Assembly (NCBI GenBank): GCA_950097015.1
Contig: CATNEN010000038.1
Span: 25,668,001-25,732,000, forward strand
DNA from: Macrostomum hystrix
Lineage: Eukaryota > Animalia > Platyhelminthes
DNA: 64,000 bases
Direction of reading: 5' to 3'
Shown: positions 5,391 to 47,199 of the stretch, in pieces
Layout of the letters: each line of letters starts with the position of its first letter
How positions within the stretch are numbered: the stretch's first letter is position 1
Notes under the pieces: model-generated
What the model saw: only the letters and a program-made list of their open reading frames with translations
Told to the model about the DNA's origin: nothing
Database searches by the model: none
Made by a program: the position numbers and the translations under genes

Positions 5391-5691
5391 CCGAGAATCT
5401 GACGAGAATCTTTCGAGAATTCTAATGCCACAATATTCGAATCACTAAGACTTAATTTTTTAACTCATCAATTAGTTTTTTATGAGAGAAATGTGTATGA
5501 CTTCTTCCTAGGGATAATTGGGTCCACGACAATGGACTCTAAAAGACTGCCAGGACATTTGAATGCCTCAAAAAAGACGAAGAAAAAAGACTGCTACAAA
5601 AAAACGACCACAAAAATGCAAAAAGACTGCTTGACAAAAAGACTGCTGACAAAAAGACTGCCGACAAAAAGACTGCTGACAATTGTTGTCC

Positions 5692-26500: not shown

Positions 26501-28229
26501 AGCCGCAGCTATTGCGTGGCGCATCTGAAGGCTGCAGTACGGCTTTTCAGTCCATGGACTGGGGAGACGCCACACCCACCCTCACTTAACTCAGCAAATG
26601 CTGGTACCCATTTAACTGCTGGGTGAACTGTAGCAATGCAGAGTTGAGCTTCTTGCTAAAGGACACAAATAGCTTCAGTGGAGGAACCGAACCTCCGACC
26701 TTCAAGTCGTGAGTCCGACGCTCTAACCACAAGGCTACAACCTACCGTAAAGACGGTATCTTACTGCGAAGAATTATCTAAATTATTTTATCAATGGGAA
26801 AACCTAGACTCCTCTTCCTCTTTCCCTTTCCTTTGCCGTTTCGAGAACAGAAAACATTTGAGATGTACCTGTAGTCACCTTAATGAAACCATCTGCATTA
26901 GTTCTTTACCACGTTAGTACCCCGTTAGTACGTTAGATTGAATGTGCTTTCCTGTCTCCTATCTTCTGTTCACGTCACATTTCAATTAAACTACACAAAG
27001 CGCTACTGAATTCTAACGCACCCGTCAAATTCAGCGTCGTAGCCATCCCGGAGATGATTGAGTGCTGCGACACCTACGGCATTGCTCATGACATCTCTCG
27101 CTTTGTGATCCCATTCGCTGCCGCCATTAAAGGCGACGGTAGTGCCTGCTTCATCTCGGTGGCAGCGGTGTTCTTAGGACAGCTCACAGGATACCCCATC
27201 ACCGTTGGCACCATCGTCATCATCGTCCTGCTGGTGTCCTCGGCTATGCTGGCTCTACCGAACATTCCGTCGGCTAGTCTGGTGATCCTAGTCACCATTC
27301 TCACCTCTGTGGGCATATCCGAGACTGAAGTGGCGCTACTGTACTCAGTGGACTGGCTTCTGTGAGTTGCCGGGGTCTCTGAGCTCGAGTCCCGCTTTTG
27401 AAAATAACATTTGCTAGCAAGACTAAAGAGCCTCTACCCAAAGTAAAGAGCCGCTACCAAAACTAAAGAGCCGCTACCCAAACTAAAGAGCCGCTACCAA
27501 AACTAAAGAGCCGCTACCAAAACTAAAGAGCCGCTACCAAAACTAAAGAGCCGCTACCAAAACTAAAGAGCCGCTACCAAAACTAAAGAGCCGCTAGCAA
27601 AACTAAAGAGCCATTACCAAAACTAAAGAGCCGCTACCAGAACTAAAGAGCCGCTAGCAAAACTAAAGAGCCGCTACCAAAACTAAAGAGCCGCTACCAA
27701 AACTAAAGAGCCGCTACCAAAACTAAAGAGCCGCTACCAAAACTAAAGAGCCGCTACCAAAACTAAAGAGCCGCTACCAAAACTAAAGAGCCGCTACCAA
27801 AACTAAAGAGCCGCTACCAAAACTAAAGAGCCGCTACCAAAACTAAAGAGCCGCTACCAAAACTAAAGAGCCGCTACCAAAACTAAAGAGCCGCTACCAA
27901 AACTAAAGAGCCGCTACCAAAACTAAAGAGCCGCTACCAAAACTAAAGAGCCGCTACCAAAACTAAAGAGCCGCTACGCACAACCCGCCACCTGCAGAGA
28001 CCGTATGCGCTCAGGTTCCATCTGTCTGTCTCACTGCTACTGTGCGGCATTCACGCATTTCATTTGTGCCGGCGATCTAAAAAAGCCTGACCAAGAAGTC
28101 GACGAAGATAAAGAGGCCGCGGCGGCGATTGCCCACGACGAAGATGACCATGGCAAAGGAAAAATATTAAAAAAAGACGAGGCCTTTAAATCGAACGGCA
28201 ACGACTTGCAAATGTCCGAGGTGGCTTGA
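23564..28229 (+). CDS. SLC1-family (dicarboxylate/amino acid:cation symporter) transporter, divergent; approx. exons 23564-23840, 24610-24684, 24761-24882, 25392-25803, 26183-26413, 27035-27361, 27998-28229
   Basis: PGELFIRLLKLTILPLI; DLLYNIFPDNLV; NMIGVIFCAAVFG; SRFVIPFAAAIKGDGS; VDWLLDRMRS; GT-AG introns with compatible phases. Confidence 0.92.
24245..24545 (-). mobile_element. tRNA-derived SINE family A, near full length
   Basis: Minus-strand head GGTGGAAGAGCGGTTAATGCG...GAGCTCGATTCC (A/B-box-like); body repeated at 5692, 7855, 23330, 35575, 38460, 41960, 43100. Confidence 0.78.
24925..25235. repeat. 30-bp intronic minisatellite
   Basis: agccacctcattccctacgccaatctgaaac units. Confidence 0.92.
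25862..26146. repeat. 30-bp intronic minisatellite
   Basis: ttaggaaccaataccagcttcaatgaccag units. Confidence 0.9.
26460..26745 (-). mobile_element. tRNA-derived SINE family B (CORE-like body)
   Basis: Head tagccttgtggttagagcgtcggact...ggttcggttcc then gtgtccttt.gcaag...cacccagcagttaaatgggtac; related head/body at 40598-40760 (+). Confidence 0.65.
27415..27977. repeat. 20-bp homogeneous minisatellite filling the last SLC1 intron
   Basis: aactaaagagccgctaccaa units. Confidence 0.95.
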
Positions 28230-29280: not shown

Positions 29281-30186
29281 TAGGGGCGTAGCCAGGGGGG
29301 CAAGGGAGGGCCACGGGGTCCCCCCTAATCGGCTGAAAAAACTTTGTGGCGCCCATACATAGTACGAGTGTAGTGGCGCTTCCCGTGTGGTAGTGGTGCC
29401 CCCGTGTGGTAGTGGCGCCCCAGTGTGGTAGTGGCGCCCCCGTGTGGTAGTGGCGCCCCCGTGTGGTAGTGGCGCCCCCGTTTGGTAGTGGCGCCCCGTT
29501 TGGTAGTGGCGCCCCCGGTTTGGTAGTGTCGCCCCCGTTTGGTAGTGGCGCCCCCGTTTGGTAGTGGCGCCCCCGGTTGGTAGTGGCGCTTCCCGTGTGG
29601 TAGTGGCGCCCCCGTGTGTTAGTGGCGCCCCCGTGTGGTAGTGGCGCCCCCGTTCGGTAGTTGCGCCCCCGTTTGGTAGTGGCGCCCCCGTTTGGTAGTG
29701 GCGCCCCGGTTTGGTAGTGGCGCCCCCGGTTGGTAGTGGCGCTTCCCGTGTGTTAGTGGCGCCCCCGGGTGGTAGTGGCGCCCCCGTTTGGTAGTGGCGC
29801 TTCCCGTGTGTTAGTGGCGCCCCGTGTGGTAGTGGCGCCTCCGTTCGGTAGTGGCGCCCCCGTTTGGTAGTGGCGCTTCCCGTGTGGTAGTGGCGCCTCC
29901 GTGTGGTAGTGGCGCCCCCGTGTGGTAGTGGCGCCCCCGTTTGGTAGTGGCGCCCCGTTTGGTAGTGGCGCCCCCGGTTGGTAGTGTCGCCCCCGTTTGG
30001 TAGTGGCGCCCCCGTTTGGTAGTGGCGCCCCGTTTGGTAGTGGCGCCCCCGTTTGGTAGTGGCGCCCCGTTTGGTAGTGGCGCCCCCGGTTGGTAGTGGC
30101 TCCCCCGGTTGGTAGTGGCGCCCCCCATCAGTAGTGCCCCCAAAAGGCGCGGTTCCTCCTAGACAAAAATCCTGGCTACGCCACTG
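29281..30186. mobile_element. MITE-like element with short TIRs enclosing a 20/21-bp GC-rich minisatellite
   Basis: taggggcgtagccagg ... cctggctacgccactg; internal tggtagtggcgcccccgtt units 29370-30140; no clear TSD. Confidence 0.7.
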
Positions 30187-30951
30187 ATTGTGTGTACTTT
30201 ATTTCCGGGTTAAAGGAGTCCTTGGTGAGTCCTTCCTCAGCTCTTGAGTGGTTCCACGCGCATGTGTGACTCTCTGCATGTCATCTATCTAATGTGGGTC
30301 CGCAGCACTAGAGCATTTACTGAGCAGCATTGCTCAATGCACGACAGATTTAACTGTCAGGACGTCTTTTTCTAGTACCTGAACTCATGAAGTAATAAAG
30401 ACTTGAAGCCCAAGCTCCAACTTTTACTCTGACTACAACCATTAGTAAAATAACAAAGAAAATTAGAACATACATTATATAAATAATCCGAGCGTGTATA
30501 AAGTGTCTGAAAAAAATATCTCGCATTAAAATATTAGTTTAATTTTTGCAGCTTGGTCAAGATAGCAGTGCGGTTTTTATGTAACTAAATTATTTTTTTC
30601 TTATAACGATTCTTTTAATATAAACTTTTAATATAAAATGTGTTTCCCAAATAGAAAGTACTCGTAAAAATAACTGTACCTTTTCAATTACAAAAAGGAA
30701 AATTTTATTTTGCTTTTAACTTTAAAACGAGAAAACAACCTTTAGGAAACTTTAGTAGAAGTGCTATTACAAAAGTGAATTAAATTATTGTACTTGGCTC
30801 CATGGCCAGCACAAGCGAAATTAAAGTTCAGTTGGTAAGTAAAGTGCATCAGAAATGGTCGTAGTCAGTCAGTTCTAATAATAGAAGTATCGATCGATCA
30901 AATAGTTTCTAAACGGGATTCCCTTGTGAATTTCTTCTCTGTTCAGCTCAA

Positions 30952-31907
30952 TCAATCAGAGCAGCTGCTGCTGGTCGATGAGTCAGATGTCCAGGCCTCC
31001 TCGTTCTCCTCGCCCGGATGTGACGATTCCACTTTTAGTTCGGGCAGGGCAGCAGCTCCGAAAGCGACAGCGAGAACCGCGGGCTCGCGACTCCCAACTT
31101 CCAGTTGCTTCTTACGCTGCTGCTGCCTTTGCTGCTTCTGTTTATTTTTGCGCTTTCGTTTTTTCGATTCGTCGCGAGTCGACGCCGGAGCTGCCGTCGG
31201 TGGCAGCAGTGTCTGCAGGACGGCGCGGAGCAGGCACAGGAAGGCTTCGCTGGCGCTGTCTGGATCTCGAGCCGTCGCCTCGCGCCAAACCAGACCGTGG
31301 CGCCGGGCAAGCGCGATGCCGGAATCCACGACAGGCGCATCCGACAATCGTCGACGATCCAGCTTGTTGCCGATGAGTGCTATGGGAGCATCGGCGGGCA
31401 GACCCGCTTCATTGCTGCGAAGGCGCTGCAGCCAGGCCTCGCAGTCGCGAAGGCTCTGGCGGTCCGTGACGTCATAGACTAGCATGGCGCACTGGCACCC
31501 GCTGTAATAGCCGGCTGCGAGGCTGCGGTATCTGAAATATAGCGAAATCAGAATTGAAGTGTTTACCACATTTTATTAGAAACCAACTCACTCCACAAAC
31601 CACTTCATTCAACCAAATACTTCACTCCATCACAAACCTACTCATTCTACTAACCATCCCACTCCGACAACAACATCCCTCACTCCATCAACCAGCCCAC
31701 TCCACCAACTCCAGCCCACTTTCGCTTACCTCTCTTGTCCAGCAGTATCCCACATCTGGCACTGGACAGGCGTCCCGTCAACCTTGATTTGTCTTGATCG
31801 CAAACTGGCGCCAATAGTCGGTGCGTAGGACTCTTTAAAATCGTGCTCGCCAGTGAAGCTAGTCAGCAGGCTCGACTTGCCAACACCGGCGTTGCCAACC
31901 ACGATGA
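30952..31907 (-). CDS. Rab-like GTPase domain 5 plus C-terminal tail (part of the multidomain gene)
   Basis: [20 protein letters not shown]|YRSL, GNKLD, EATAR; polybasic [10 protein letters not shown]; ends SSSCSD*. Confidence 0.9.
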
Positions 31908-34900
31908 CTGCGGAAAGCAATAAGATGCGTGAATTGTTACTCAAAATACAATGCAATGCTAGATAAAATGTTATTCAATATCTATTATAAAATAGTGACC
32001 AAATCCTTTACCATTCACCAGTACAGCAGGCTTCTCATCGATTACGGCTGGCAGAGCGGACTCATCCTCTTCACTGTTACGGTTTGCTTGACGAACGGCT
32101 TCAGCAAAAGCTTCATGGACATTTTCGCCAGTCCTTGCATTGACGGCAACGAATTTCAAGCCGTACCTATCAGCTAACAGTCGAGCACCTTCAGCGACTT
32201 CGCTGCTGGTTGAACCTGTTTCGTTCAGTACTACAAGCACGGCTGCCTGCGGCGCCTTGGATTGCAGATCTCGCAGTGTGGCTTCGGCCCGCTCAAAGCT
32301 GCTTCCGGAGTTCACCACTAGCAGGGCGCAATCACTGTTGGCGTAGCACTGGCTGCTGGCTTGGCTGCGTGGTTTGAAATTTTGTAGAAACGGAAATTCT
32401 AAATGGAAATTTAGTTTAATTTTACACGTGGCTTCTGTCGCAGTAAGCGACATTTTTGCTACCTTAATGCATTTTCTGCTGCGTCTAATGGACACGTGCT
32501 CGACTAGTTGATTGAATTAAAGCTCTTGACAAAAATGAGGTGCTGATTTGGCGTACAGCGATGTACTAAATGCATCGACACCACTGGTGAACTTTCTGTC
32601 AGAATTCTTGAATATCCCGTGTTTAGGAGATGTGACAACTTAGAATCTTTCTTCAGAAGGGGCGCTACAAAAAGTTTTCCCGTGTTCTTGAACTTTGTGT
32701 ACTTTCATTGCCCATTTAAATAGTTTGCCAGTAGAATCCCCTCCTGGTACTTTACCAGTTAAAAAAACTGTTAGTAGCTGTCACCAAGACTGTCAATCTA
32801 CGAGCCTCGTAAAATTACCTTTTATTGCTAGGCAAATCCCAGATCATGCACTTGACGGGTTGACCATCCACTTCAATATTTTTAGTAGCAAAATCGACTT
32901 CTTTAGTTTGCTGATACGTTTCTTTAAGAGTTTTGCCGAGAAATCGACCAATCATCGTAGTCTTGCCAACCTGCTCGTCGCCAATTAATAGCACTAAAAA
33001 TGCAAAGCAACATTGCTTAATTTTTTTTCTGGAGATACAAGCCAGTTAAAAAATAGTCTGCCGTCAAACTAACCCTTTACTCGTTGAGTGTTTTTTTCTG
33101 GTTCGGCAAAAAACTTAGGAAAGTTGGTTGCACTGAGCACATCAGTGTCAGCCGTGAGTTGGTCTAATGACGTTCCAACGAGCGCAATGGCATTGGAAGC
33201 CGCCTTTGGTACATACTGCGAGCCCTGAAGTTTTTTCTGTACAAGGCAACGACTCTGCAACATCATGAAGGCCTGGTCCACGTTCAGTCCGCTTTTGGCG
33301 CTGACCTGCCAGCACAGCTCGAGGTCGTGACGTCTGGCAAATTCCTCCGCTTCAGATCTAGAGACGGCGGCGTCCATGTCGCTCTTGTTGGCCACCAGAG
33401 CCACTGGCACGCCGTCAGGAGCTCTGCACCGCAGCTCATTGAGCCAGCGCTCACAGTTGACGAAGCTGTCTCTATTGGAGGCATCAAAGACTAGCAGAGC
33501 TCCAGATATGCCACCGTAGTATGAGTATGTGATTGCGCGGAATCTGAAGTGAGATGGTTGGGCACCCGCAGCCATGAATTAATGGTTTGTGTCATGACAG
33601 GTGGATGGTGAAGAGGTCAAAATTTGCATTGAGAGCAGTTTTACATGTGCATTAAAGAGTGTTGGCGTTTCAAACGCTTATCGAATACTCATATGCTTCG
33701 CGAAGGAGTCCTATACAATGGCATCTATAAATGATGCTTTTCTGGCGGGTAAGACGCTTCTCTAACGACTCAGAAGCTACTTTAACAAATCAAACGCCTT
33801 ATTAAAGACACAAGAAACCGTGCAATAGAAGCTTCTAGAGAAAATTTTAAAGCCTTTTAGAACGTCGTTTAAGATGCTTTTGACGCGCTCTCGCAGTCGC
33901 TAACTTGAAACGCTTAAAAACGACTATAAACACCCTTTAACATGCATTTTAAAGTCCTTGTTACGTGACATAAAAATGCTTTATTGTTATTTTGTCATTT
34001 ATAAACTTTTACTGAACTTAAACGCTTTTAGAACGACTTCAGCGTTGCACCTTTATCAAGGTATGTTGAAGGATGGCTTAGAATGAATGAACGAGCATTT
34101 TGAAGGGATGATCTTCAAATTGCATTAGTAGATGTAAAAAAATACGATAAACCAATGAGATAACTCGCCTCTCTTGGCCTGCGGTGTCCCAAATCTGGCA
34201 CTTGACTGTAGAGCCGTCAACATCGTTATTAACTATGCGAAAATCCACACCAATAGTTGGTATTGCTTTGAGGCTTGCATCGAACTCTTTGTCAGCGAAT
34301 CGTCGAGTTAGGCAGGACTTGCCGACGCCGGTGTCGCCGATTATCAGCACTGAAATTTTTTTTGAATAGCTACGCGTTTTCAGTGCAAGGTTGTGTCATT
34401 TTCTCACTAAAAATTGTTACTTTAATTTGATGTAATTGACTTGAAACAAGAACACGGCAAAAAATTTTTTTACATTAAATAAAGCCAAAGTCGCTATGTC
34501 TGGGATATCATCAATAATCTGTCATCACTCTCTCCTGCCATGTCTGATCTATATCCTCTCTCCATAGAGATCTTGACTTTGACTACATATAGTCACGTCT
34601 GATCTCTCCCGTGTTTTCTCTATCCCCGTCTTATTTAATCTGGGGCGAGATATATTATTAAGTTTTGTAGTGTTACAGCGTTATTAACTGCTTAAAATCA
34701 GTCGAAGTTCAATCAGTAAGCCCCCTTAACTAGCGCCGCTTACGTTTGATGATAAAATCCGGTGTAGGCTCAGCAGTGGTGATAACAGGCTGCATTGGCT
34801 TACTAACAACCTCATTCGAAAACTTTTCAGCAACTTCACGGGTAACTTCTGAGGTGGCAGCATTGTTGTTTGCTTCGTGAGACACCTGCTCCTGACTTGA

Positions 34901-37900
34901 TCCAGACTTTGAACTGTCATTACTAAGAACTATTCGCGTCAAACTTCTGAATGTCTCGGCGACGTTAAGTCCGCTCTTGGCGCTAACCTGCCAGCACAGC
35001 TCGAGGCCGTGACGTCTGGCAAACTCCTCCGCTTGCGGTCTGGAGACAGCGACGTCCATGTCGCTCTTGTTGGCCACCAGAGCCACTTGCAGGCCGTCCG
35101 GAGCGTGGGACCGCAGATCGTTCAGCCAGCTCTCGCAACTTTCCAAGCTGTCTGGATTCGTGGCGTCAAAGATTAAAAGTGCACCGTGGCAGCCACGATA
35201 ATAAGCGCTGGTGATGCTGCGAAACCTGAAAATTTGCGTTGTTATATTAAAAAATTGCGTTGCAGGTGTGGTAAATCGACTTAAAAAGTCTCACCTCTCT
35301 TGCCCGGCAGTGTCCCAGATCACTGACTTCACTCTGGTACCGTCGATGGTCTCGCAAACTGAACTGAAATCAACTCCGATTGTTGGCACAAAGCTTTCGT
35401 GGAATTCTTTGCTAGCGAAGCGACGAAGCAGACAGGATTTGCCGACACCGGAGTCTCCGACTAGCACCACTGGATCGTATTAAGGGTTTATATTGGTATG
35501 AATATCATTAATGATGTTCGTAATATATTCGTTTGAGAGGGCTTATGGACAATCACACCTATTTTTTCCACTGTCGACCCGCAGCCATTAGCAGGAAATT
35601 CTGCTTGTGCCACTGGCTCCTGAACACACTCCTTATCTCGGTGTCAGAATCATAAGGACGACAATGTCATCAAAACGGACTAACTGTTTGCAAGTCTGAT
35701 GACAAAAATTTTGGTATGACAATTCTGAGAAAAAATAATAAATGAATTTGTGGAATCATTTTAGAATGAGAAGTCATGGTAAATATTTAAATACATCTTA
35801 CATTTAACCAGGCGCTCATAGCTTTGTTCTCCATGATTTGAGCTGTCTTGCTTCTTTTCTGAAGTCAACTGAGTTGGTGCTTGCTGCACATTAGAGGCTC
35901 TACTGAAAGCGGAAATAAAAAAACAATTCTATCCAACTACAATTTTAACATACTTCTCATTTCGATTTTTTAACAAACCCGCTCGGCCTGTTATCGCCGT
36001 TAAGAACTCGTCGCTCCAAGCTTCTGAAAGTCTCGTCGACATTGAGCCCGCTCTTGGCGCTGACCTGCCAGCACAGCTCGAGGCCGTGACTTGTGGCAAA
36101 CTGCTCAGCCTCCGACTTGGATACAACGGTCTTCTTGTCGCTTTTGTTAGCCACCAAAGTCACAGGCACTCCGTCTGGGGCGCTTGACCGCAGCTCGTTG
36201 AGCCAGCGTTCACAGTTGACGAAGCTGTCTCGATTAGACGCATCAAAGACTAGCAGGGCTCCAGCTATGCCTCGATAATAGGAGCTCGTGATTGTGCGAA
36301 ATCTGAGATGTTTTTGAGGAAATGGTTGAATGTAGCTCGTACATTGGCTGGGGGTAGGAACTGGAGGGGCTGTTAAGTGGTTGAATGTACTCTGATTTAG
36401 TAAGGAATTGGAGAGGTTGATATAGTGATTGAATGTACACTGGCTAGAGTAGGAATCGGAGAGGTTGATGAAGTGGTTTAATCTACACTGTCTAGGGTAG
36501 GAATTGGGCGGTTGATAAAGTGGCTGAATGTACCCTAGCTGGGGTAGGAATTGGAGGGGTTGATAAAGTGGCTGAATGTACACTAGCTGGGGTAGGAATT
36601 GGAGGGGTTGATAAAGTGGCTGAATGTACACTAGCTGAGGTAGGAATTGGAGGGGTTGATAAAGTGGCTGAATGTACACTAGCTGGGGTAGGAATTGGAG
36701 GGGTTGATAAAGTGGCTGAATGTACACTAGCTGGGGTTGGAATTGGAGGGGTTGATAAAGTGGCTGAATGTACACTAGCTGAGGTAGGAATTGGAGGGGT
36801 TGATAAAGTGGCTGAATGTACACTAGCTGAGGTAGGAATTGGAGGGGTTGATAAAGTGGCTGAATGTACACTAGCTGAGGTAGGAATTGGAGGGGTTGAT
36901 AAAGTGGCTGAATGTACACTAGCTGGGGTAGGAATTGGAGGGGTTGATAAAGTGGCTGAATGTACACTAGCTGGGGTAGGAATTGGAGGGGTTGATAAAG
37001 TGGCTGAATGTACACTAGCTGAGGTAGGAATTGGAGGGGTTGATAAAGTGGCTGAATGTACACTAGCTGGGGTAGGAATTGGAGGGGTTGATAAAGTGGC
37101 TGAATGTACACTAGCTGGGGTAGGAATTGGAGGGGTTGATAAAGTGGCTGAATGTACACTAGCTGAGGTAGGAATTGGGCGGTTGATAAAGTGGTTGAAT
37201 GTACACTAGCTGGGGTACGAATTGGAGGGGTTGATTAAGTGGCTGAATGTACACTAGCTGGGGTAGGAATTGGAGGGGTTGATAAAGTGGCTGAATGTAC
37301 ACTAGCTGGGGTAGGAATTGGAGGGGTTGATAAAGTGGCTGAATGTACACTAGCTGAGGTAGGAATTGGAGGGGTTGATAAAGTGGCTGAATGTACACTA
37401 GCTGGGGTAGGAGTTAAACGCGCACAACCCACCTCTCCTGGCCGGCAGTGTCCCAAATCTGGCACTTCACCTTTGTCTCTTTGATTTCATTTCTTGCAAT
37501 GCTAAAATCAACTCCAATAGTTGGCATGAAATTCTCGCTGAACGCATCGTTTACAAATCTGTTCAATAGGCTGGACTTGCCAACGTCAGAGTCTCCGAGA
37601 AGAAGCACTAAAAATGTTTTAGTTCGTATTCAAATGAAAAGCACGTAAAGCTCTTGTGCCGAATATTCGAAAATGATTTTAACAATTGTGTTGGAGTTAA
37701 TAAACCTTGAAGAAATTAAAAAAAGGAAATATATTAAGTCTAGAATTGAATTAAAAATAGACTGGACTCACATTTCATCAGCACCTCTGGTGCCTCATTG
37801 GCCTCAGACGAAATGCCATCAACAGGTGCCTCAGGCCTATGAATAGTATGGTTGTTTTAGAATTACGTCGAGCAAAGTGATACTTTGGGTAAGAGGAATG

Positions 37901-40900
37901 TAAAGACCATATAAAAATAAATTTTATATGACAGGGAGGAGGGAAGTAGAGAAAGGGATAAAGAGGGAAAAAGAAAGAGGGAGCTAGGAAATTTTACATA
38001 CTTTGGCGATTCAGTCGCTTTATCTCCATCTTTTTTAGTAGCCACATTTGCTTCAGCAGCAGCAGCAGCAGCAGCAGCTTGTCTAACTTTTTCTTTCCTT
38101 TCAACGCCCCACGCGCGAAAGTTTCTAAAGAAATCTTTGTCTGGTCGGTCGTGCAGCGAAGCCCAGTCTGAGCGTCCACGGGTGGACGCCATTGGATGCT
38201 TGCTTAGCCAATCCTGGCGCTGTGACGTCATTTCGTTGCAACCAATCGAATCGCCGGATTCACTCAGTAGCTCAATGAATAGAATATAGGCTTCGTCCAG
38301 CCAACGAATATAGGAGCCGTAGGACTCAGTGAGATCAATTACTTCTTTGGCTAGGACCATGGCTCGCTCAGGATTACCGGAATCACGATACAGCCTATGC
38401 GGTAGGTTTTGGTGTTAACTAGCGATTATAATAATAAGAATAATAATAATAATTGCTGGACTGCAGGCAATATCACATCAAACTGTACGTAGGCAGACAC
38501 TCATACACGTGTGTACATCTGCTCTCACTTTCTCATCGTCAGGGCAGATGGCAGGAAATGGTCGTATGAATCTTTGTTGAGAAATTGTCGTTTAAAATGA
38601 TCTTTTGACGTTTCTTGAGAAATTTTACAAGTATTGGTGCACGGACTACTCAAGTAGGTCCTATCTACTAGTGGTCCTTGTATTGGTGCCGATGGGGTTA
38701 CTTTTACTTAATTGCAGGGAGGCCTGGGGCACTTGACGCACAAGCGCAGGAACGGCATGCCGCCAGGCCGGCGAACTAGGCGGGAGTCGCCAAACGCGCC
38801 ATCTGGACCCCTGGACACAGGCACCTCACACACAGCAGCAAGCCAAGCGGGGAAGGGCCAGCCAGAGTGCCTCTCACCCCAGGCCCGCACACGCGCAGAG
38901 CTGACCAAACCAGGGGAGGACTTAGATGCCTGAAGGGTTGGGACGAGAGGACCAAGCCACGTGCGCAGACGGCTGGTGAAACCTCGCCGCTCAGAGCACG
39001 CATTGCTGGTGCACACCCGCCCCATCCCCCATACAACGCCTCACACCCGGCCCAACACACAAACACAAACAAGCAGGCATGTAGAAGGCAGGGGTTAAGC
39101 TATTTTAAATTAACTTTGGTTGTAAATAATAAGGTGCATTTCCGCAAGTCACTAGTTCGCAAAACTCCAACTAAGCCCCGAAATAATCGTGACTTGAAGG
39201 GAGGAACGAACCAGCGACCATTGGGAAGTGAGGCAGCGAAATTAGCGCTGACCCACTCAACCCCGCTGAGTGGGGTTAGGGTTTCTTTGATTGGGCGCTC
39301 ACTTGGCCAATTCCAGCTTCGCTTTGAGCATCACGTGACCTCTAGCGGGTTGGCTATCAGCCAAAGACGCCACGGCCTCCTCAGCCAGAATTTCCGCATC
39401 CTGCCGACTGTGAGCGGTCCTGACGATGGCCAAGAGTCGACCTAGGCTGATCTTGGCTTGCACAGCGGCTAGGCTCTGTTGACCGAGAGAGGAGCTCAAA
39501 ATTTCGATGGCTTTTTTACCACAATCGACGGCCGCTTGAGTCAGTTCGGCTGGCAACAGAGCCGGATTAGCTAATCTAGCGGCTAGGGTGAGATTAGTCA
39601 TGAGAGCTGCTACATTGGGATGATCGCCAGTTGGCGGATAAGCGCTAGCCGACATTCGCACTGCCGTCAGAGCGGCATCCACGTGAGCAGCGGGCTCGGT
39701 TGCATCCGCAGCGGCTTGGTGACGCTTCTCGTGATGCCGCAACCGGAGCAGATGAGCCAGGGCCAGGTGAGACTGGATCTCAGCTAGCAGCGGGTGCTGG
39801 TAGCCAAGGATTAGCTGGGCGAATAGGGACGCATTCTGAAATTAGTAGGCAGGATGGGATCTTTAAGAGGAGCGACGGACTGAGGGTAAATAGGATTTCA
39901 GGTGAAATGGGATTTTAGGTGAAATGGGATTTCAGGTGAAATGGGATTTCAGGTAAAATGGGATTTCAGGTAAAATGGGATTTCAGGTGAAATGGGATTT
40001 CAGGTGAAATGGGATTTCACGTGAAATAAGACTTCAGATGAAATGGGATTTCAGGTTAAATGAAATTAGGGTAAATGTGATAATCTCAACTCACCACTGC
40101 AACCTCCACGCCGAAATCGTCCTGATGAAAGGCGTTAGAAAATTTCACATAGTTCAGCAGAGATTTAATGTACTCTGGCGATTGGGCTTTGTAGAATTTT
40201 CTGAAAAATTGTAACAACAGCATTCATTGAATCGACAGCTGACTGTTGAGATGCAACTCGGAGCCACTTAAAACACTAGCAGTAAAGTGACTATTTACTT
40301 TGAGTCGCTAGTGATGGCATGCTTGTAATACTCGAACGTCAGTTATACTTAAATGCTTTACCGACTCAAACGCTTCTCTGACTACTCAAACGCTTATCTA
40401 ACGATGCAAACGCTTCACTAACGACTCAAACGCTTCTTTAATTACTCAAACGCTTCTCAAACGACTCAAAAGCTCCTCTTCTGACTTTATGTGACTAAGT
40501 GGCAATGAAAAACAATCAGATTTCTAGAGTCCAATTTAAATAAGTTATCCAACCGGCCTATTCGCAGTAGCTCGTACTTTATTACACTGAGCTATCCGCC
40601 CCGGATAGATCAGTCAGTAAGGTGTCGGACTCTGGATCAGATGGTTCTGGGTTCGACTCCCGACCTAGTCTAGAACTATTCGTGCAGCCTTTGGCAAGCT
40701 GCTTTGCCCTGATGTACACACAGTCTACTCAGCAGCAAATGATAACCGACATTTCTTCGGGTAATAATAATTCCGGATGGTGTGGAATAAAACAGTTCTG
40801 TGCGGCAATTCAGTGGGCTTTGGATGCTGCCGATATGTTTAGAAAAAATTCCATTGCTGACACGCGGCTGTCAACCATTGTCCGAGAGACCCGGGAGTAC

Positions 40901-43900
40901 AATAGGTGTGCAGTCCCCACCTGCTAGTGTGCTTGACACACAACACTTGCACTGGCCCTTGGGTCTGGTGTCTTTATTATTATATTATTAATATTATTTA
41001 TTACATGACCATCGAGACAGTTATTCGGTTTCCACGACGCACAATTCGAGAACTAAACAACAAAAATCTTCAAACACTCACTGAGCGTGCTGAACGCAGG
41101 CGACAGCCAGTTTTTCCGCTTTGGTCTCGTCCGAATTCAAAATGTAGATGTGCAAAGCGTGATAAAGAATCTTAAACACCGCCACTGTGTCGTTCAGGTC
41201 GACATTCTGTGACAAAAACATAAAATATGCATGCAGTTAGAGCTTGGATATGCTTTTCAGATGTGGCGTAGCTTCAATTTTGCTAAAAAAATCACATTTC
41301 AATGGGTTAAGAAACGTTTGAGTCTGATAGTGAAGCATTTAAGCACTTAAAACGTGTTTTAATTCGTTTGAGACGTTAATAAAGCTTTTGATTCACTTTG
41401 AGAAGCGTTTGAGTAGTTAGAGAAGCTCTTAAGAGTTAAAAGAAGCGTTTGAGTTGTTAGAGAAGCGTTTGAATCGTTAGACAAGCGTGTGAGTCGAGAA
41501 AGACTCTAAAACACCGCCTGTCACTCTAGACTGCTTGGATCTGTACAGGAGTGAGCGTAATGTGGCATTAGACATGCTTCATCTGAAACGCACCGAGATA
41601 GCGCTGGCAAACGCGCCCAGCGCAGACGTCAAACTACCCTGGTCCAGCAGTAGGCGTCCGATCTGAGCCTGCAGCAGCGCCTGATTGTCCATCACTTTGC
41701 GACCAAACGACAGGCAGTTGATTCTGGCGGCCGTGGCCTGAGCGGTCTGGCTTGCGGAGTCAGCCAGTTGGTGCTGGGCATTGTTCAACCTCGCCTCCAT
41801 CAGCCGGACGCTGGCCCGATAGATTGGTAGAAGGGCCTCCACGCATTCGCCCCCGTATCTGAATAGAGTGTTGGTTTGCCTGCGATAGTTTTTTCAACTG
41901 ACAAACACGGTTTTTTTACGTTTTACAGTAAGACTATACGCTTTAAGACTACGAGAAAGTCAGTGCAGATGCACACACATGTGTAAGCACGTGCCTGCGT
42001 ACCGAAACTGTATGAGTGTGTGCTCAGGAGTCAGTAAAGTTAGTTGAATTGCCTCCCCGCTGGCTGCGTGTCTTCTGTCACAATGTCCAGTGTCCAGCAT
42101 TAAAACTTGGCAAAGTACTGGCATATGCTTAGATGCAGCATCAAGCGACGGCTTTCATTAGTCCTCACCTGTGCAGGTATTCGGCAAGCGCGTTGGCAAC
42201 CGTCTCGCAGGCCGCAAACTGACCCGCCCCGGCTAGGAAGTCGAATATTCGGCCAGCCAAATTGGCCAGCTTGGCGGCCGCGTAGCGCGACCAGAAACCG
42301 TCCGTAAACAGTCGACGTCCGGCTGGTCCGGCCGCCAAATCGGCAAACGCTGCAGCCATGGCGTCGGCCAGAGTTGGCGCGTTAGCCAGTAGGTACTTGT
42401 AGGCCAGGTGGCGTCGACGCAAGTCGCACAACAGCCGATGCAGCGGCGAGATGAAGCACAACAGGAGGCGACGCTCCGGTTCGACGCGAGCGGTGCGCAG
42501 AGCGAACTCGTCTGCCATGCGAAGACGCTCTAGGCAACGACGTTCCCGCTTGGCAGCAGCGCCGCCACCGGCGGTCCAGGCAGCGTAGGTCCGCGCAAAG
42601 TGCTCGGGCAGATCCGGCGGCAGTCGGCTCAACCGAGAATCCGAGCCGCCCAGTTGAGCTTCCATCAGTTCTAAATCGGCTTTGGCAGCGGCGCGCAAGG
42701 CCTTCCAGCGGCGCCGGTGCCCAGCGGAGGCGGCGTCACTGTGGTCGAAATCTTTGCGACCCGGCTCGATGGGTGGCAGAGGCGGCTGCTGCTGCTGCTG
42801 CTGTGCTGTTGTTGAAGACGATTTTAGATTGGCCACATTGGTGCTATCTAGAAAATCGGCTAGTATTTGATGATTCCTGGCGGTGGCTGAATCCACTGCG
42901 GATGTGGCTGACAGAGAGTTCCTACAGAGTTGTAGAATGCAACAAAATGATTTTCGAAAGAAAATTGTGAACAATTTAGAGAAAGACTCTAAAACACCGC
43001 CTGTCACTCTAGACTGCTTGGATCTGTACAGGAGTGAGCGTAATGTGGCATTAGACTACATTACCTAATGTACATCAACAACTACCCAATAATAGGGAGG
43101 GTCAAAAGTGCCTGAGCTCGATTCCGAGGCGAGGCCACGTTTATTGGGGGCCCAGCTTGGGGACTGTCTTGCAATTTGCGCCTCTGAGGGCCAGCCTCCA
43201 AGGCACAGTGAGAGTGTACTCCACTGACGACTGACGACTCCACTCCACGACACTCCCTGACGACGTGAAATTCAGGGCCCATATACGCATCCCAGTTTGA
43301 GTGCGTACCTGCGTACAGTATCTGTGTGTGCGTGTGTGCTCAGGAGTCAGCGAAATTGGCAGAATTGCCTCCTCGGTGGCTGCAGGTCTAGTGTCACCAG
43401 ATGAAGTGCAGCCCACAGCCTTCCATTATTATTAATATATTATACTCAAGAATAATTTTGCAAAGATTTACCTGAACTTGTTGTACCACTGAGTGCTTGG
43501 ATCCTTAGCTGGCAACACATCCAGCAAAAGTCGAGTCTTCTCCGGCCTGCTGCCGCCGCCCAGCACAAAGCGGACATCCGTCTCAGTGAGAATACCCTCC
43601 CGTTTCAGATAGTCAATCACCGGGTCCACATTCAACTGTTGGACTAAGCAGACTCGGTTAACACGAAGTCGAAGGACATTCTGAGCATCTCGCTGGCTCA
43701 GTGGGCTGGGCTGTTGGGCCCTAGAATAGTTGAAAATACTTAATAGGCAATCAGCATGGCACTTTAACTAACTTGTTTAGCTAAGATGCATGTCTATTTA
43801 GATACTGATAATGAGTCAACTTTGAATGCACGAGCCATGAGTAAAATCCTTTGCTACATAAACAAAAGCTATATACATGAATATATTGCAATAGAAAAAA

Positions 43901-44491
43901 AGTAAGAAATTCAAAAAAAAATTTGCTATGAAAATATGAGATAAATTAAACTGAATATACTTTGGTCTCAACATGTATCCATGTGACATGACCACTCCAC
44001 TTATTGTACTTAAATATCTGTTGAATATTTCATGCACAATTAAACTTTTGTCTACTTCCAAAGTTACAAGAGATTATATAATTGGCTTAATTCAACTATT
44101 TTCATATTATAGATCCACAAGTACAAATTTTTAAGACTTTTAATACATTTAAAATTATCTTTTAATACTCTAAGTACCTCAATTAGGCCCCTATGGCATT
44201 TTTGTAGTTTATTACTTTGTTTAGCTAGGATTTAGAAGCACTTAAAGGCTCGAGCATAAAGTAACTACCATAAAAGCTTTTTAATCATAGGAGACAGCAA
44301 GATTAAGGCAATGCATAATATATCTTGACTCAAAACATTTAGAGAAGTTAGATTTATTTTTATAACACTTTTTATAGTCTTATAGATAGGTCATTTTTTA
44401 TTTTTAGCAAGTCATGAATATTCGAAAGTAAATACCTGGAAGAACTCGCTGCATATTGGTCACTGTGTATTTTAGATGAACTTTCACTCAT
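30952..44491 (-). CDS. CARD - TPR-like - 5x Rab-like GTPase multidomain protein, 20 exons, ~1912 aa
   Basis: Exons (minus): 44491-44436, 43720-43472, 42921-42169, 41858-41594, 41206-41082, 40200-40095, 39835-39303, 38394-38002, 37836-37772, 37607-37433, 36302-35979, 35902-35802, 35469-35295, 35225-34744, 34349-34169, 33543-33074, 32993-32819, 32364-32012, 31907-31730, 31531-30952; total 5739 nt; 18 GT-AG and 1 GC-AG introns, all phases compatible. First exon is the least certain. Confidence 0.82.
32012..32993 (-). CDS. Rab-like domain 4, degenerate (part of the multidomain gene)
   Basis: [53 protein letters not shown]. Confidence 0.82.
33074..34349 (-). CDS. Rab-like GTPase domain 3 (part of the multidomain gene)
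   Basis: [23 protein letters not shown]|[20 protein letters not shown]. Confidence 0.9.
34744..35469 (-). CDS. Rab-like GTPase domain 2 (part of the multidomain gene)
   Basis: [23 protein letters not shown]|[22 protein letters not shown]. Confidence 0.9.
35979..37607 (-). CDS. Rab-like GTPase domain 1 (part of the multidomain gene)
   Basis: [23 protein letters not shown]|[22 protein letters not shown]. Confidence 0.9.
36340..37412. repeat. 39-bp minisatellite inside the intron of Rab domain 1
   Basis: ggctgaatgtacactagctggggtaggaattggaggggttgataaagt-type units; source of spurious repeat ORFs. Confidence 0.95.
38002..41858 (-). CDS. TPR-like alpha-helical region (exons 4-8 of the multidomain gene)
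   Basis: [25 protein letters not shown]; [18 protein letters not shown]; [13 protein letters not shown]; [25 protein letters not shown], resembling kinesin-light-chain-type TPRs. Confidence 0.65.
38702..39260 (-). repeat. ~560-bp dispersed repeat, copy 2 (intronic)
   Basis: Inverted copy of 4545-5110. Confidence 0.85.
39893..40060. repeat. 18-bp intronic minisatellite
   Basis: ggatttcaggtgaaatgg units. Confidence 0.9.
40598..40930 (+). mobile_element. tRNA-derived SINE (CORE-like)
   Basis: gccccggatagatcagtcagtaagg...gggttcgactccc followed by gcctt.ggcaag...agtctactcagcagcaaatg. Confidence 0.6.
42850..43720 (-). CDS. CARD (death-fold) domain, exon 2 and start of exon 3 of the multidomain gene
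   Basis: [31 protein letters not shown]...[16 protein letters not shown]...WYNKFR|NSL...HQILADFL; not in the ORF track. Confidence 0.8.
43100..43423 (+). mobile_element. SINE family A copy (intronic)
   Basis: cctgagctcgattccg head, shared body, (ATT)n tail. Confidence 0.78.
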
Positions 44492-46148: not shown

Positions 46149-46691
46149 TCAGCGAAAGATTCTCATGCTGGTAGCCAACTGGCTGAACTCTTCGAAGCTA
46201 ATTTGACCGTCTCCGTCCGTATCGGCCGTGGCCATCATCTGGTCCAGCTCAGTCTCGGTCAAACCCTCGCGCAGCAGGTCATTCATCACGTGATTGAGCT
46301 CGGCCCTCGAAATGAAACCGTCTCTATTTCTGTCAAGCAGTTCGAAAATTCTGCGCTTCTCCTCGACGTCGGCATCGCCGACGCCGTCTGGCGTCGAAGC
46401 CGAGCCGACGCTGGACTTCTCGGCGAAGGCGGACATCATGTCAACAAATTCGGCGAATTCTAGACGACCGTTGGCGTTCTTGTCGAAGTCGCTGATGAGT
46501 TTGTCAGCTTCGGATCTGGTCAGACACTGTCCGGCCGACCGCATCAACCTGACTAGCTCCTTGGTCTCGATGGCGCCGTTGCCATCGGTGTCGTAGAGGT
46601 TGAAGACCTCGCGAAGGATTTCATAATCGCAGCCGCATTTTCGTTGCCTACTCGTACTAGTTGGTCGATCTTGCTTTGACTGGTCAGACAT
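46149..46691 (-). CDS. Calmodulin-like protein, 4 EF-hands, intronless CDS
   Basis: DTDGNGAIETKE, DKNANGRLEFAE, DRNRDGFISRAE, DTDGDGQISFEE. Confidence 0.92.
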   Translation of the reverse strand: MSDQSKQDRPTSTSRQRKCGCDYEILREVFNLYDTDGNGAIETKELVRLMRSAGQCLTRSEADKLISDFDKNANGRLEFAEFVDMMSAFAEKSSVGSASTPDGVGDADVEEKRRIFELLDRNRDGFISRAELNHVMNDLLREGLTETELDQMMATADTDGDGQISFEEFSQLATSMRIFR

Positions 46692-47199
46692 GGCCAAAAA
46701 GATTTCGTTATTGTTGCACCAACACTGCAGCTAGAGCGATTGAGCCAGAAGATGTTGGTTATCTCTTCTTGTTAGAAGAAGGGCCTCACATTTCTGCCGA
46801 CCCCAACCTGGCGGACCAATGGCAGTCTGGCTCTGGTTGCTAGCCAAGCTTTCTCTCTCCTTTTCCGCCTTCCTAACTGCGTGTCACCGCCAGTGTCTGG
46901 CTGACTCAGGCCCTACAGGATTTCCTCATCTGTGCCATTGTCATGCCAGGAGCATTGCCAACAGGGCGACACTCTCCCTTACATTCTGTCAGCCAATGCA
47001 TGACTGAAACAGCTCAGCCTATCCCCAACCGTCTGCCACAATGAGTGATGTTCTTCTTAAACCACTTGTTCAGTATCTGCATTGAGCATTGTGAATTCCT
47101 TCAGCTGGCAGCAAAACGTTCTTCTTTTTTGAAGCACGATAAGTACTAATCATCACATTCCTTCAGGACCTGCAGAAAATGGCTAAACTCTAGGGGTGA

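What the first reader, a model, noticed from the sequence alone, without database searches (positions are those of the whole stretch)
30952..44491. One gene encoding CARD + TPR-like region + five tandem Rab-like GTPase domains
Seen: what the ORF track shows as scattered Rab-like fragments splices into a single 5739-nt frame over 20 exons. Every internal Rab unit has a splice donor just before its apparent stop codon, and the linker supplies the first beta-strand of the next domain (EVLMK|LLLLGD, YERLVK|LVLVGD, DFIIK|LLIIGD, QRVK|VLLIGD, AVLVN|VIVVGN). Upstream, phase-compatible exons encode TPR-like helices and a CARD. Established: Rabs are normally single-domain proteins; the large Rabs (RASEF/Rab45, Rab44, CRACR2A) carry one Rab domain, and Miro has two GTPase domains. 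I know of no CARD-TPR-(Rab)5 architecture. Inference: a death-fold signalling scaffold coupled to a multi-GTPase array, e.g. an innate-immune or cell-death sensor whose Rab repeats act as switches or as decoys for pathogen effectors that target Rabs.
Basis: partly seen in the sequence, partly recalled or inferred. Interest (0 to 1): 0.95.

Follow-up and report, generated by a model that had tools for sequence, protein, structure and literature searches.

The report
Flatworm CARD protein with five Rab domains
A Macrostomum-type flatworm has one expressed gene for a roughly 1,900-residue protein that joins a cell-death docking domain (CARD) and a helical repeat region to five Rab-type GTPase switches in a row; I found no paper describing this build, although an unstudied four-Rab version from Macrostomum lignano is already in UniProt.

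Summary
On the minus strand, 20 exons (44491 to 30952) join into one 5,739-nt frame of 1,912 codons. All splice sites are GT-AG except one GC-AG. Spliced transcript contigs from two independent studies confirm every junction from Rab unit 1 to the last exon, including all four junctions between Rab units. The "stops" after each unit therefore lie in introns.

Pfam finds a CARD above its threshold and five Ras-family domains whose best solved relatives are Rab1, Rab35 and Ypt1. The middle is all-helical and TPR-like, on weaker evidence.

- Units 1-3 are canonical Rabs under purifying selection.
- Unit 4 has lost G3, G4 and G5 and is probably a pseudo-GTPase.
- Unit 5 is divergent but keeps G1, G3 and G4.
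- There is no C-terminal prenylation motif.

The genome has one paralogue with a single Rab. M. lignano database proteins link CARD, helical region and Rab, and one carries four Rab domains, so the architecture is conserved and public but uncharacterised. Predicted CARD-less multi-Rab proteins also exist in rotifers, a fungus and a clam.

The exon 1-10 junctions are not RNA-checked here. Function, such as a link to the caspase-2-like or Apaf-1 CARD network or a decoy role, is inference only.

The parts
44436..44491 (-). Exon 1 (56 nt); ATG at 44491; aa 1-19
   Evidence: ATG preceded by an in-frame stop, donor GTATTT. The N-terminus resembles the M. lignano orthologue (MS...ASS[S]R). No RNA check.
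43472..43720 (-). Exon 2: CARD helices 1-4 (aa 19-102)
   Evidence: PF00619 CARD, 33.8 bits (cut-off 23.9); best PDB match is the RAIDD/CRADD CARD (E 1.9e-5); 81% identical to M. lignano P0001.
42169..42921 (-). Exon 3: end of CARD plus first helical region (aa 102-353)
   Evidence: collinear with P0001 residues 103-356; homologues found only in Macrostomum. No Pfam family.
41594..41858 (-). Exon 4: helical region (aa 353-441)
   Evidence: 85% identical to P0001 residues 352-443; GT-AG.
41082..41206 (-). Exon 5: helical region (aa 442-483)
   Evidence: 85% identical to P0001.
40095..40200 (-). Exon 6: helical region (aa 483-518)
   Evidence: 89% identical to P0001 residues 485-519.
39303..39835 (-). 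Exon 7: TPR-like repeats (aa 519-696)
   Evidence: TPR_12 at E 0.001, 19.7 bits, below the cut-off; the orthologue's model is most confident here, and Foldseek hits APPBP2, LGN, KLC and OGT TPRs.
38002..38394 (-). Exon 8: last helical repeats and Ala/Lys-rich spacer (aa 696-827)
   Evidence: The paralogue has the same block.
37772..37836 (-). Exon 9: 65-nt linker ending EVLMK, the lead-in to beta-1 of Rab unit 1
   Evidence: It is homologous to the M. lignano P0001/P0013 linker. An RNA contig extends 141 nt upstream of exon 10, but its letters were not shown.
37433..37607 (-). Exon 10: Rab unit 1, N-half (G1 GDSDVGKS, G2, G3 WDTAGQE)
   Evidence: Ras, E 1e-21; the loose end at 36302 reads ...[10 protein letters not shown], which is this exon, so it is joined to exon 11 in RNA.
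35979..36302 (-). Exon 11: Rab unit 1, C-half (NKSD, SAK)
   Evidence: Ras, E 2.5e-22; joints.
35802..35902 (-). Exon 12: 101-nt linker between units 1 and 2 (ends ERLVK)
   Evidence: joints 35902/35979 and 35469/35802 in X3, X4 and X2.
35295..35469 (-). Exon 13: Rab unit 2, N-half
   Evidence: Ras, E 1e-20; joint (cut +2).
34744..35225 (-). Exon 14: Rab unit 2, C-half plus a roughly 60-aa linker ending DFIIK
34169..34349 (-). Exon 15: Rab unit 3, N-half; GC donor
   Evidence: joint 33543/34169 with ends CT..GC, a GC-AG intron used in RNA.
33074..33543 (-). Exon 16: Rab unit 3, C-half plus linker ending QRVK
   Evidence: PDB best hits Ypt31, Rab2, Rab11 and Rab1..
32819..32993 (-). Exon 17: Rab unit 4, N-half, degenerate (P-loop kept, G3 = WDLPSNK)
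   Evidence: Ras, E 3.7e-12. Joint 32993/33074 in X3, X4 and X1.
32012..32364 (-). Exon 18: Rab unit 4, C-half, degenerate (LNET for NKxD, NAR for SAK) plus linker ending AVLVN
31730..31907 (-). Exon 19: Rab unit 5, N-half ([15 protein letters not shown])
   Evidence: Joint 31907/32012 in X3, X4 and X2. Orthologous to the last M. lignano unit (support 100/100).
30952..31531 (-). Exon 20: Rab unit 5, C-half (NKLD), polybasic stretch, acidic/Ser tail, stop at 30952-30954; no prenylation motif
30731..30951 (-). 3' UTR as far as the transcript contigs reach
   Evidence: contigs end at 30731-30736. AATAAA at 30704-30709, just beyond.
36339..37412 (.). 48-bp tandem repeat (22 copies) filling most of intron 10, inside Rab unit 1
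   Evidence: It is spliced out in RNA (exon 10 joined to exon 11).

Best explanation
This is one transcribed protein-coding gene of a Macrostomum-type flatworm, with 20 exons and 1,912 aa (about 210 kDa). The domain order is CARD, then about 650 aa of TPR-like helical repeats, then a spacer, then five Rab-like GTPase domains joined by flexible linkers, then a polybasic and acidic tail.

Origin: the array arose by tandem duplication of a phase-1/phase-1 exon pair that encodes one whole Rab domain. The starting point was a CARD-helical-single-Rab ancestor of the kind still present as the paralogue on contig 31.

State of the units: units 1-3 are intact Rab1/Rab35-like switches kept by purifying selection. 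Unit 5 is a divergent but probably nucleotide-binding unit that is conserved with M. lignano. Unit 4 has lost G3, G4 and G5 and is probably a pseudo-GTPase. The protein lacks the C-terminal Cys prenylation motif, so it cannot be membrane-anchored as ordinary Rabs are.

Likely mode of action (inference, about 0.3): it is a soluble scaffold. The CARD would make a homotypic contact with one of the few CARD proteins of this animal (the single CARD-caspase, Apaf-1, a CARD+Death adaptor, or a HEPN-CARD-NACHT protein). The TPR solenoid would bind a peptide ligand. The chain of Rab switches would engage Rab regulators or effectors according to nucleotide state. Together this would couple membrane-traffic or GTPase status to a death-fold signalling complex.
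For: Gene structure:
- Canonical splice sites and a single 5,739-nt frame.
- Spliced contigs from two studies, with 0-2 mismatches each, join units 1-2-3-4-5 and exon 10 to exon 11. They leave the introns uncovered, and the contigs overlap into one path ending about 220 nt past the stop.
- Exons 11-20 alone give 1,005 open codons.

Domains:
- Ras on all ten half-exons.
- CARD above its cut-off, nearest to the RAIDD CARD.
- The Rab of the orthologue hits Rab1A/B, Rab35 and Ypt1 at E 1e-45 to 1e-40.
- G and RabF motifs.
- The TPR-like middle rests on a weak TPR_12 hit, Atlas leads that are all TPR, an all-helical hairpin model, and Foldseek hits to APPBP2, LGN, KLC and OGT at E 2e-9 to 1e-5.

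Conservation and selection:
- M. lignano P0001 and P0013 link CARD, helical region, linker and Rab. P0004 has a CARD plus four Ras domains.
- Unit 5 is orthologous between the species.
- dN/dS is 0.14-0.28 between units 1-3.

Genomic context:
- The paralogue has one Rab.
- The CARD repertoire of the genome is six loci.
- Platyhelminths are reported to have one CARD-caspase plus Apaf-1 (PMC11463336).
Against: - No RNA junction data for exons 1-10 in this species. Read laying allows one call, and I kept the repeat-filled intron out of it. The link from the CARD/TPR part to the Rab array therefore rests on frame and phase, on a contig that runs 141 nt upstream of exon 10 (letters not shown), and on M. 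lignano gene models.
- Contigs cannot show that one molecule spans all 20 exons, and they hide rare isoforms.
- The TPR assignment is below the Pfam threshold and rests on a low-confidence model of the orthologue (mean pLDDT 53.6).
- Nothing tests protein existence, nucleotide binding, CARD partners or any immune or cell-death role.
- The M. lignano model P0004 lacks unit 4 and the first half of unit 1, so the unit number may differ between species or that model may be faulty.
Confidence: 0.8

Rival explanations
1. The locus is a tandem array of five separate small Rab genes (own promoters, or an operon resolved by spliced-leader trans-splicing) next to an unrelated CARD/TPR gene. The long frame would then be an accident of the reader's exon choice.
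For: Macrostomum is known to use trans-splicing and operons (my own knowledge, not tested here). An intron just before beta-1 is an old Rab intron position, so each unit could have had its own short first exon. An in-frame stop follows each unit's donor within 1-13 codons.
Against: RNA contigs from two studies splice each unit directly to the next, in frame. The inter-unit introns are only 76-394 nt long. There is no ATG at or near the start of any N-half exon, so a trans-spliced unit would lack beta-1 or the P-loop. No unit ends in a prenylation motif. M. lignano database models also join units.
Confidence: 0.02
2. The Rab array is a gene of its own (a CARD-less penta-Rab like the rotifer or Solemya predictions), and the CARD/TPR exons upstream form a separate gene in this species.
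For: No RNA junctions were obtained for exons 1-10 (limits). CARD-less multi-Rab proteins are predicted elsewhere.
Against: Exon 10 starts in phase 1 without a start codon. A transcript contig continues 141 nt upstream of it. Exons 8-9-10 are phase-compatible and homologous to the continuous M. lignano proteins P0001 and P0013, which run CARD to Rab.
Confidence: 0.06
3. The gene yields a family of isoforms with one to five Rab units, by intron retention or early polyadenylation at the inter-unit introns. The five-Rab protein would then be only one product, possibly a minor one.
For: Each inter-unit intron brings a stop within 1-13 codons of the donor. M. lignano P0001 ends with a tail that departs from P0004 exactly at the exon-11 donor equivalent, which is what a retained intron would give.
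Against: The inter-unit introns have no contig coverage in X3 or X4, while the flanking exons do. However, contigs drop rare variants. P0001 may simply be a truncated gene model.
Confidence: 0.25
4. The locus is transcribed but decaying: a lineage-specific exon-duplication accident with no function for the extra Rab units.
For: Unit 4 has lost G3, G4 and G5 and is missing from the M. lignano model P0004.
Against: There are 1,912 open codons across 19 introns. dN/dS is 0.14-0.28 between units 1-3 at dS 0.75-0.95. Units 2, 3 and 5 have counterparts in M. lignano. The gene is expressed in two studies.
Confidence: 0.05

Closest known systems
Macrostomum lignano UniProt A0A1I8FWW3 (P0004) and NCBI PAA53536.1 / BOX15_Mlig018981g1 (P0001), 'CARD domain-containing protein', uncharacterised
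   Same: Orthologous family. The CARD, the helical region (60-89% identity exon by exon) and the Rab units match. P0004 has four Ras domains, and its last unit is the orthologue of unit 5 here.
   Different: P0004 lacks the degenerate unit 4 and the N-half of unit 1. P0001 stops after one Rab with an intron-like tail. Neither has been studied, and I found no paper naming them.
Paralogue in the same genome
   Same: CARD (58% identical), helical region (about 40%), the same block before the spacer, and a Rab split at the same place after DTAGQ[ED]R.
   Different: It has a single Rab domain and a long Lys/Ser/Glu-rich spacer.
Large Rab GTPases (Rab44, Rab45/RASEF, Rab46/CRACR2A; review PMC8303950)
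   Same: A Rab domain at the C-terminal end of a long multidomain protein.
   Different: Those have EF-hands and a coiled coil, one Rab domain and a prenylated C-terminus. This protein has a CARD and TPR-like repeats, five Rab domains and no prenylation motif.
Proteins with several GTPase domains: Miro (two), bacterial EngA/Der (two), GIMAP8 (three) (from my own knowledge)
   Same: More than one P-loop GTPase domain in one chain.
   Different: They belong to other GTPase families, have fewer domains and carry no death-fold domain.
Death-fold plus Ras-like GTPase or NTPase scaffolds: DAPK1 (Roc plus death domain), Apaf-1 and NOD1/2 (CARD, STAND NTPase, repeats) (from my own knowledge)
   Same: A death-fold recruitment domain is combined with P-loop NTPase switch(es) and a repeat solenoid, which is the logic of a regulated signalling platform.
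   Different: There is no NACHT or NB-ARC domain. The order is CARD, repeats, GTPases. The switches are Rab-type and fivefold.
Predicted CARD-less multi-Rab proteins: P0005 (8 Ras, ENA), P0006 (7), Rotaria P0007 and P0008 (6), Tulasnella P0009 (4), Solemya velum P0012 (3)
   Same: Tandem complete Rab domains joined by short Cys-free linkers with no internal start.
   Different: They have no CARD or TPR part. They are gene predictions that I did not verify. P0012 ends in a CaaX-like CNIL.

Membership tests
Rab family of small GTPases | G1-G5 guanine-nucleotide motifs (GxxxxGKS/T, switch-I Thr, DxxGQ, NKxD, SAK) | tested here: met
   Units 1-3 have all five. Unit 5 has G1, G3 and G4, with G5 as TAR. 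Unit 4 keeps only the P-loop (WDLPSNK, LNET, NAR), so it is not met for unit 4.
Rab family of small GTPases | Rab-specific RabF motifs ([33 protein letters not shown]), with Rabs as the best matches | tested here: met
   Units 1-3 carry all five RabF motifs in near-consensus form. Unit 5 has them partly and unit 4 does not. PDB best hits are Rab1A/B, Rab35, Ypt1, Rab8 and Rab11.
Rab family of small GTPases | C-terminal Cys prenylation motif (CC, CXC, CCXX or CaaX) | tested here: not met
   The protein ends ...SSSCSD. No linker carries such a motif. The M. lignano homologues and the paralogue also lack it.
Large Rab GTPases (Rab44/45/46) | N-terminal EF-hand(s) and coiled coil followed by one prenylated Rab domain | tested here: not met
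   No EF-hand family appears in the Pfam scans of any exon. There are five Rab domains and no prenylation motif.
CARD (death-fold superfamily) | Match to the CARD profile above the curated threshold | tested here: met
   PF00619 scores 33.8 bits against a cut-off of 23.9 on exon 2 and 36.7 bits in the orthologue. RAIDD CARD at E 1.9e-5.
CARD (death-fold superfamily) | Six-helix bundle | tested here: inconclusive
   The orthologue's model has six helices at residues 29-128, but pLDDT is only 41-77.
CARD (death-fold superfamily) | Homotypic CARD-CARD binding | not testable with these tools
   Candidate partners were only listed: CARD-caspase, Apaf-1, CARD+Death and HEPN-CARD-NACHT loci.
TPR repeat proteins | Profile match above threshold | tested here: not met
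   TPR_12 scores 19.7 bits (cut-off 30.1) on exon 7 and 17.2 bits in P0001.
TPR repeat proteins | Helix-turn-helix solenoid fold | tested here: inconclusive
   The model shows about 20 consecutive 14-20-residue helices. Foldseek hits APPBP2, LGN/Pins, OGT and KLC TPRs at E 2e-9 to 1e-5, but the model's mean pLDDT is 53.6 and TM-scores are low. Atlas leads are all TPR at 0.85-0.87, below the 0.9 mark.
STAND/NLR-type signalling NTPases (Apaf-1, NOD) | Central NACHT or NB-ARC domain | tested here: not met
   Only faint P-loop-level NACHT or AAA matches appear, all inside the Ras domains.

The most novel reading that the evidence does not exclude
The protein is an animal 'integrated-decoy' sensor. 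The non-prenylated Rab1/Rab35-like array would serve as bait for pathogen effectors that modify or bind Rabs. Modification or nucleotide-state change would release the TPR/CARD part, which would then nucleate a CARD complex with the flatworm's single caspase-2-like initiator caspase. This would be a guard mechanism built from Rab domains rather than an NLR.
Probability: 0.08. Interest if true: 0.9.

Novelty: new variant of a known kind. Interest (0 to 1): 0.62.

Why it matters
Rab GTPases are textbook single-domain, lipid-anchored switches. Here five of them, one of which is degenerate, are chained without an anchor behind a caspase-recruitment domain. The arrangement is conserved in two Macrostomum species and is expressed. 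If the protein works as a unit, it would be a new way of wiring GTPase state to death-fold signalling in an animal whose CARD network is tiny: one CARD-caspase, Apaf-1 and a few others. It is also a clean natural example of domain-array growth by duplication of a symmetric-phase exon pair. M. lignano allows RNAi and transgenesis, so the function can be tested. The scattered multi-Rab predictions in rotifers, a fungus and a clam suggest an overlooked class of poly-Rab proteins.

Tried and rejected
- **'Goes back 36302->34169' joint.** I rejected it as a back-splice. The loose letters that follow it translate to the end of exon 10, which lay outside the laid stretch. Its last 35 nt resemble exon 15.
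- **Operon or separate-gene reading.** Rejected; see the rivals.
- **The look-up of encoding contigs.** It was closed, so I could not fetch the M. lignano locus or transcript contigs.
- **The search for homologous proteins with exon 3 and with the orthologue's residues 440-850.** These returned only M. lignano entries, with no transcript-derived proteins of this species, so they gave no extra junction evidence.
- **The search of protein representatives with exon 3.** It gave two real hits (P0001, P0002) and one spurious repeat protein (P0003).
- **AlphaFold2 on the orthologue with a 14-row alignment.** The model was poor (pLDDT 53.6), so I used it only for secondary structure and as a weak TPR lead.
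- **Bacterial-type promoter/terminator scan.** Irrelevant for a eukaryote; ignored.
- **Paper searches.** I searched for tandem Rab domains, CARD-Rab and the M. lignano accessions. I found nothing relevant except the large-Rab review and the lophotrochozoan apoptosis paper.

**Handling of the spliced model.** I did not send the joined spliced protein to any search, fold or database tool. Exons were searched one by one by reference. Exons were joined only inside local scripts, to count frame and stops and to cut units for a local alignment, tree and dN/dS. In one search, a 58-residue exon translation copied from the output was typed into the script.

Full report
**What is in the sequence**

The region is eukaryotic, and the gene lies on the minus strand. 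The ORF listing shows ten Rab-like fragments in five pairs. Pfam Ras (PF00071) matches all ten. The N-halves cover profile positions 1-60 and the C-halves cover positions 60-162, so every domain is split right after DTAGQER.

I used an M. lignano orthologue as a guide (tblastn) and read the boundaries directly. The rebuilt model has 20 exons and 5,739 nt, giving 1,912 codons with one terminal stop.

Introns are 69-1,130 nt long. All are GT-AG except a GC donor after exon 15. Each N-half exon is entered in phase 1 and each unit is left in phase 1. The preceding exon ends with the residues that precede beta-1 in ordinary Rabs (EVLMK, ERLVK, DFIIK, QRVK, AVLVN). The exon pair encoding one Rab is therefore a symmetric module that can be duplicated in tandem without breaking the frame.

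**RNA evidence**

The look-up of sequencing runs returned six runs from two studies. I laid X3 and X4 (study P2) and X1 and X2 (study P1) on window 30700-36335. I kept this stretch under 6,000 letters and clear of the 48-bp tandem repeat in intron 10.

The contigs match with 0-2 mismatches each, skip every predicted intron, and leave the inter-unit introns uncovered. They are therefore RNA-derived. Confirmed joints are:
- 31531/31730
- 31907/32012 (unit 4 to 5; both studies)
- 32364/32819
- 32993/33074 (unit 3 to 4; both studies)
- 33543/34169 (the GC-AG intron)
- 34349/34744 (unit 2 to 3)
- 35225/35295
- 35469/35802 and 35902/35979 (unit 1 to 2 through the 101-nt exon 12; both studies)

The odd 'goes back 36302->34169' joint is a mapping artefact. 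The letters that follow translate to [10 protein letters not shown], which is exon 10, and that exon lay outside the laid stretch. This in fact shows exon 10 spliced to exon 11 across the repeat-filled intron.

The contigs overlap by 25-30 nt into one path that ends at 30731-30736. An AATAAA lies at 30704-30709. The RNA-confirmed exons 11-20 alone form an open frame of 1,005 codons. The stops at 35957, 34730, 33069 and 31971 are therefore intronic, and the rival reading of five separate genes is contradicted.

**What the RNA evidence does not show**

- The junctions of exons 1-10 are not RNA-checked in this species.
- One contig runs 141 nt upstream of exon 10, but its letters were not displayed.
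- Contigs cannot prove that a single molecule carries all 20 exons, and they hide rare isoforms.

**Domains**

*CARD.* Exon 2 gives a CARD hit above the curated threshold (33.8 bits against 23.9). Its nearest solved relative is the RAIDD/CRADD CARD (E 1.9e-5).

*Helical middle.* The middle (aa about 165-800) has no family above threshold. TPR_12 scores 19.7 bits. The Atlas neighbours are all TPR families, with scores of 0.85-0.87, so they are leads only. An AlphaFold2 model of the orthologue is poor (mean pLDDT 53.6). It shows about twenty consecutive 14-20-residue helices, and Foldseek places it with the APPBP2, LGN/Pins, OGT and KLC TPR solenoids (E 2e-9 to 1e-5). 'TPR-like' is therefore reasonable but not proven.

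*Rab units.* The Rab domain of the orthologue matches Rab1A/B, Rab35, Ypt1 and Rab8 at E 1e-45 to 1e-39. Exon 16 of the window matches Ypt31, Rab2, Rab11 and Rab1. Motif reading gives:
- Units 1-3 have all of G1-G5 and all five RabF motifs.
- Unit 5 keeps G1, G3 and G4, but its switch I and G5 are altered.
- Unit 4 keeps only the P-loop (WDLPSNK for DTAGQE, LNET for NKxD, NAR for SAK), so it is probably a pseudo-GTPase.

*C-terminal tail.* The protein ends ...SSSCSD after a polybasic stretch and an acidic/Ser-rich tail. There is no prenylation motif, and the linkers carry none either.

**Relatives**

In its own genome (220 Mb, 42 contigs), the helical region and the CARD have exactly one paralogue, on contig 31. 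That paralogue encodes a CARD, the helical region, a Lys/Ser-rich spacer and a single Rab split at the same place.

An exhaustive profile-free search of 1.84 billion representatives with exon 3 found only Macrostomum-type proteins.
- **P0001** is M. lignano PAA53536.1 (BOX15_Mlig018981g1; UniRef100_A0A267DWG7). It has 1,063 aa, with a CARD and one Ras domain.
- **P0004** came from a length-windowed search with the orthologue's Rab region. It is UniProt A0A1I8FWW3, 1,667 aa, with a CARD plus four Ras domains. P0004 and P0001 are identical up to the exon-11 donor equivalent. After that point P0001 runs into a short unrelated tail, as an intron read-through would. P0004 in turn lacks the N-half of unit 1 and has nothing matching unit 4.

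Taken together, M. lignano has the same CARD-helical-multi-Rab gene, so the architecture is conserved and already public, though only as automatic annotation.

The same search also showed predicted CARD-less proteins with 3-8 complete tandem Rab domains: ENA contigs (8 and 7 domains), Rotaria (6), Tulasnella (4) and Solemya velum (3). Their linkers are continuous, with no internal start and no Cys motif. I did not verify these predictions.

**Evolution of the array**

In a local ML tree, unit 5 pairs with the last M. lignano unit (support 100/100). The M. lignano units 1-3 group with each other (94/98) rather than with their positional counterparts. This points to concerted evolution, or to independent duplication, of units 1-3. 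Unit 4 sits on a very long branch.

Between units 1-3, the C-half exons show dS of 0.75-0.95 and dN/dS of 0.14-0.28. The N-half exons are saturated at synonymous sites. The duplicates are therefore old and have been kept under purifying selection.

**How it probably works**

Shown: the gene structure, its expression, the domain content and the state of the motifs.

Inferred: the protein cannot be lipid-anchored as Rabs normally are. It is therefore most likely a soluble scaffold whose Rab units bind Rab regulators or effectors according to nucleotide state, while the TPR solenoid binds a peptide and the CARD makes a homotypic contact.

The genome has only six CARD-encoding loci detectable exon by exon:
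- this gene
- its paralogue
- a CARD-caspase (contig 30)
- Apaf-1 (CARD, NB-ARC, APAF1_C, WD40; contig 11)
- a CARD plus Death-domain locus (contig 38, 4.03 Mb)
- a HEPN_DZIP3-CARD-NACHT locus (contig 1)

Apart from the paralogue, the gene's CARD is nearest to that of the CARD-caspase (29% over 62 aa; weak). PMC11463336 reports that platyhelminths have a single caspase-2-like CARD-caspase plus Apaf-1. A link from GTPase or traffic state to that caspase platform is therefore the most economical hypothesis, and I put it at about 0.3. An additional set of shorter isoforms is possible (about 0.25).

**Comparison with known families**

The Rab units pass the Rab tests except for prenylation. [quoted passage not shown] It is not an NLR/STAND protein, because it has no NACHT or NB-ARC domain. 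It resembles those platforms only in logic: a death-fold domain plus P-loop switches plus a repeat solenoid.

No paper in the held library mentions tandem Rab domains, a CARD-Rab fusion or the M. lignano accessions.

- The joined spliced protein was not sent to any search, fold or database tool. Exons were searched singly, by reference.
- Joining was done only inside local scripts, for frame counting, unit cutting, the tree and dN/dS.
- In one search, a 58-residue exon translation copied from the output was typed into the script.

**Verdict**

The structural interpretation is supported. The claim of an unknown architecture must be softened, because an unstudied M. lignano orthologue and CARD-less poly-Rab predictions exist. 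The function is open.

Noticed in passing
window 36339-37412: A 48-bp tandem repeat of 22 copies (93% matches) fills most of the 1,130-nt intron that splits Rab unit 1. The region has a strong GC skew (0.37 in the 36-38 kb bin).
   Followed up: partly
window 42979-43056 and 41496-41573: A 78-bp stretch is 100% identical in introns 2 and 4 of the gene, on the same strand. It may be a small mobile or recently converted element.
   Followed up: partly
window 46149-46697 (minus strand): A single-exon ORF of 182 aa lies about 1.7 kb upstream of the gene on the same strand. By eye it looks like a four-EF-hand calmodulin-like protein. It has its own stop and was not scanned against Pfam.
   Followed up: no
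window 29370-30125 and 49700-51400: There is a 19-bp tandem repeat of about 40 copies just downstream of the gene. A long proline-rich repeat ORF region at 49.7-51.4 kb has extreme GC skew.
   Followed up: no
L010 (G000:C38:4029500-4036500), ORFs 3432-3776(-) and 2387-2788(-): A CARD ORF is followed about 650 nt later on the same strand by a Death-domain ORF, which is a CRADD/RAIDD-like arrangement. PMC11463336 reports CRADD as absent from platyhelminths.
   Followed up: partly
L009 (G000:C1:11760500-11767500), ORFs 2270-3412(+) and 3615-6233(+): HEPN_DZIP3 plus CARD is followed by a NACHT ORF. This looks like an NLR-type gene with a HEPN-CARD N-terminus.
   Followed up: partly
Proteins P0005, P0006, P0007, P0008, P0009, P0012: Predicted proteins have 3-8 complete tandem Rab domains and no other domain: ENA contigs, Rotaria socialis and R. 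sordida, Tulasnella and Solemya velum. Their linkers lack start codons and Cys motifs. The Solemya protein ends in a CaaX-like CNIL. I found no paper describing such poly-Rab proteins.
   Followed up: partly
Proteins P0001 and P0004 (M. lignano): The two database models are identical until the position equivalent to the exon-11 donor, where they diverge. P0001 appears to read into the intron, and P0004 skips the exon-10 equivalent. Neither public model seems complete.
   Followed up: partly
window 23500-27400 (plus strand) and 20400-21650: By eye, the plus-strand ORFs downstream resemble exons of a sodium:dicarboxylate/amino-acid symporter gene. The 20.4-21.6 kb stretch holds inverted copies of a transposase-like ORF. 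Neither was scanned.
   Followed up: no
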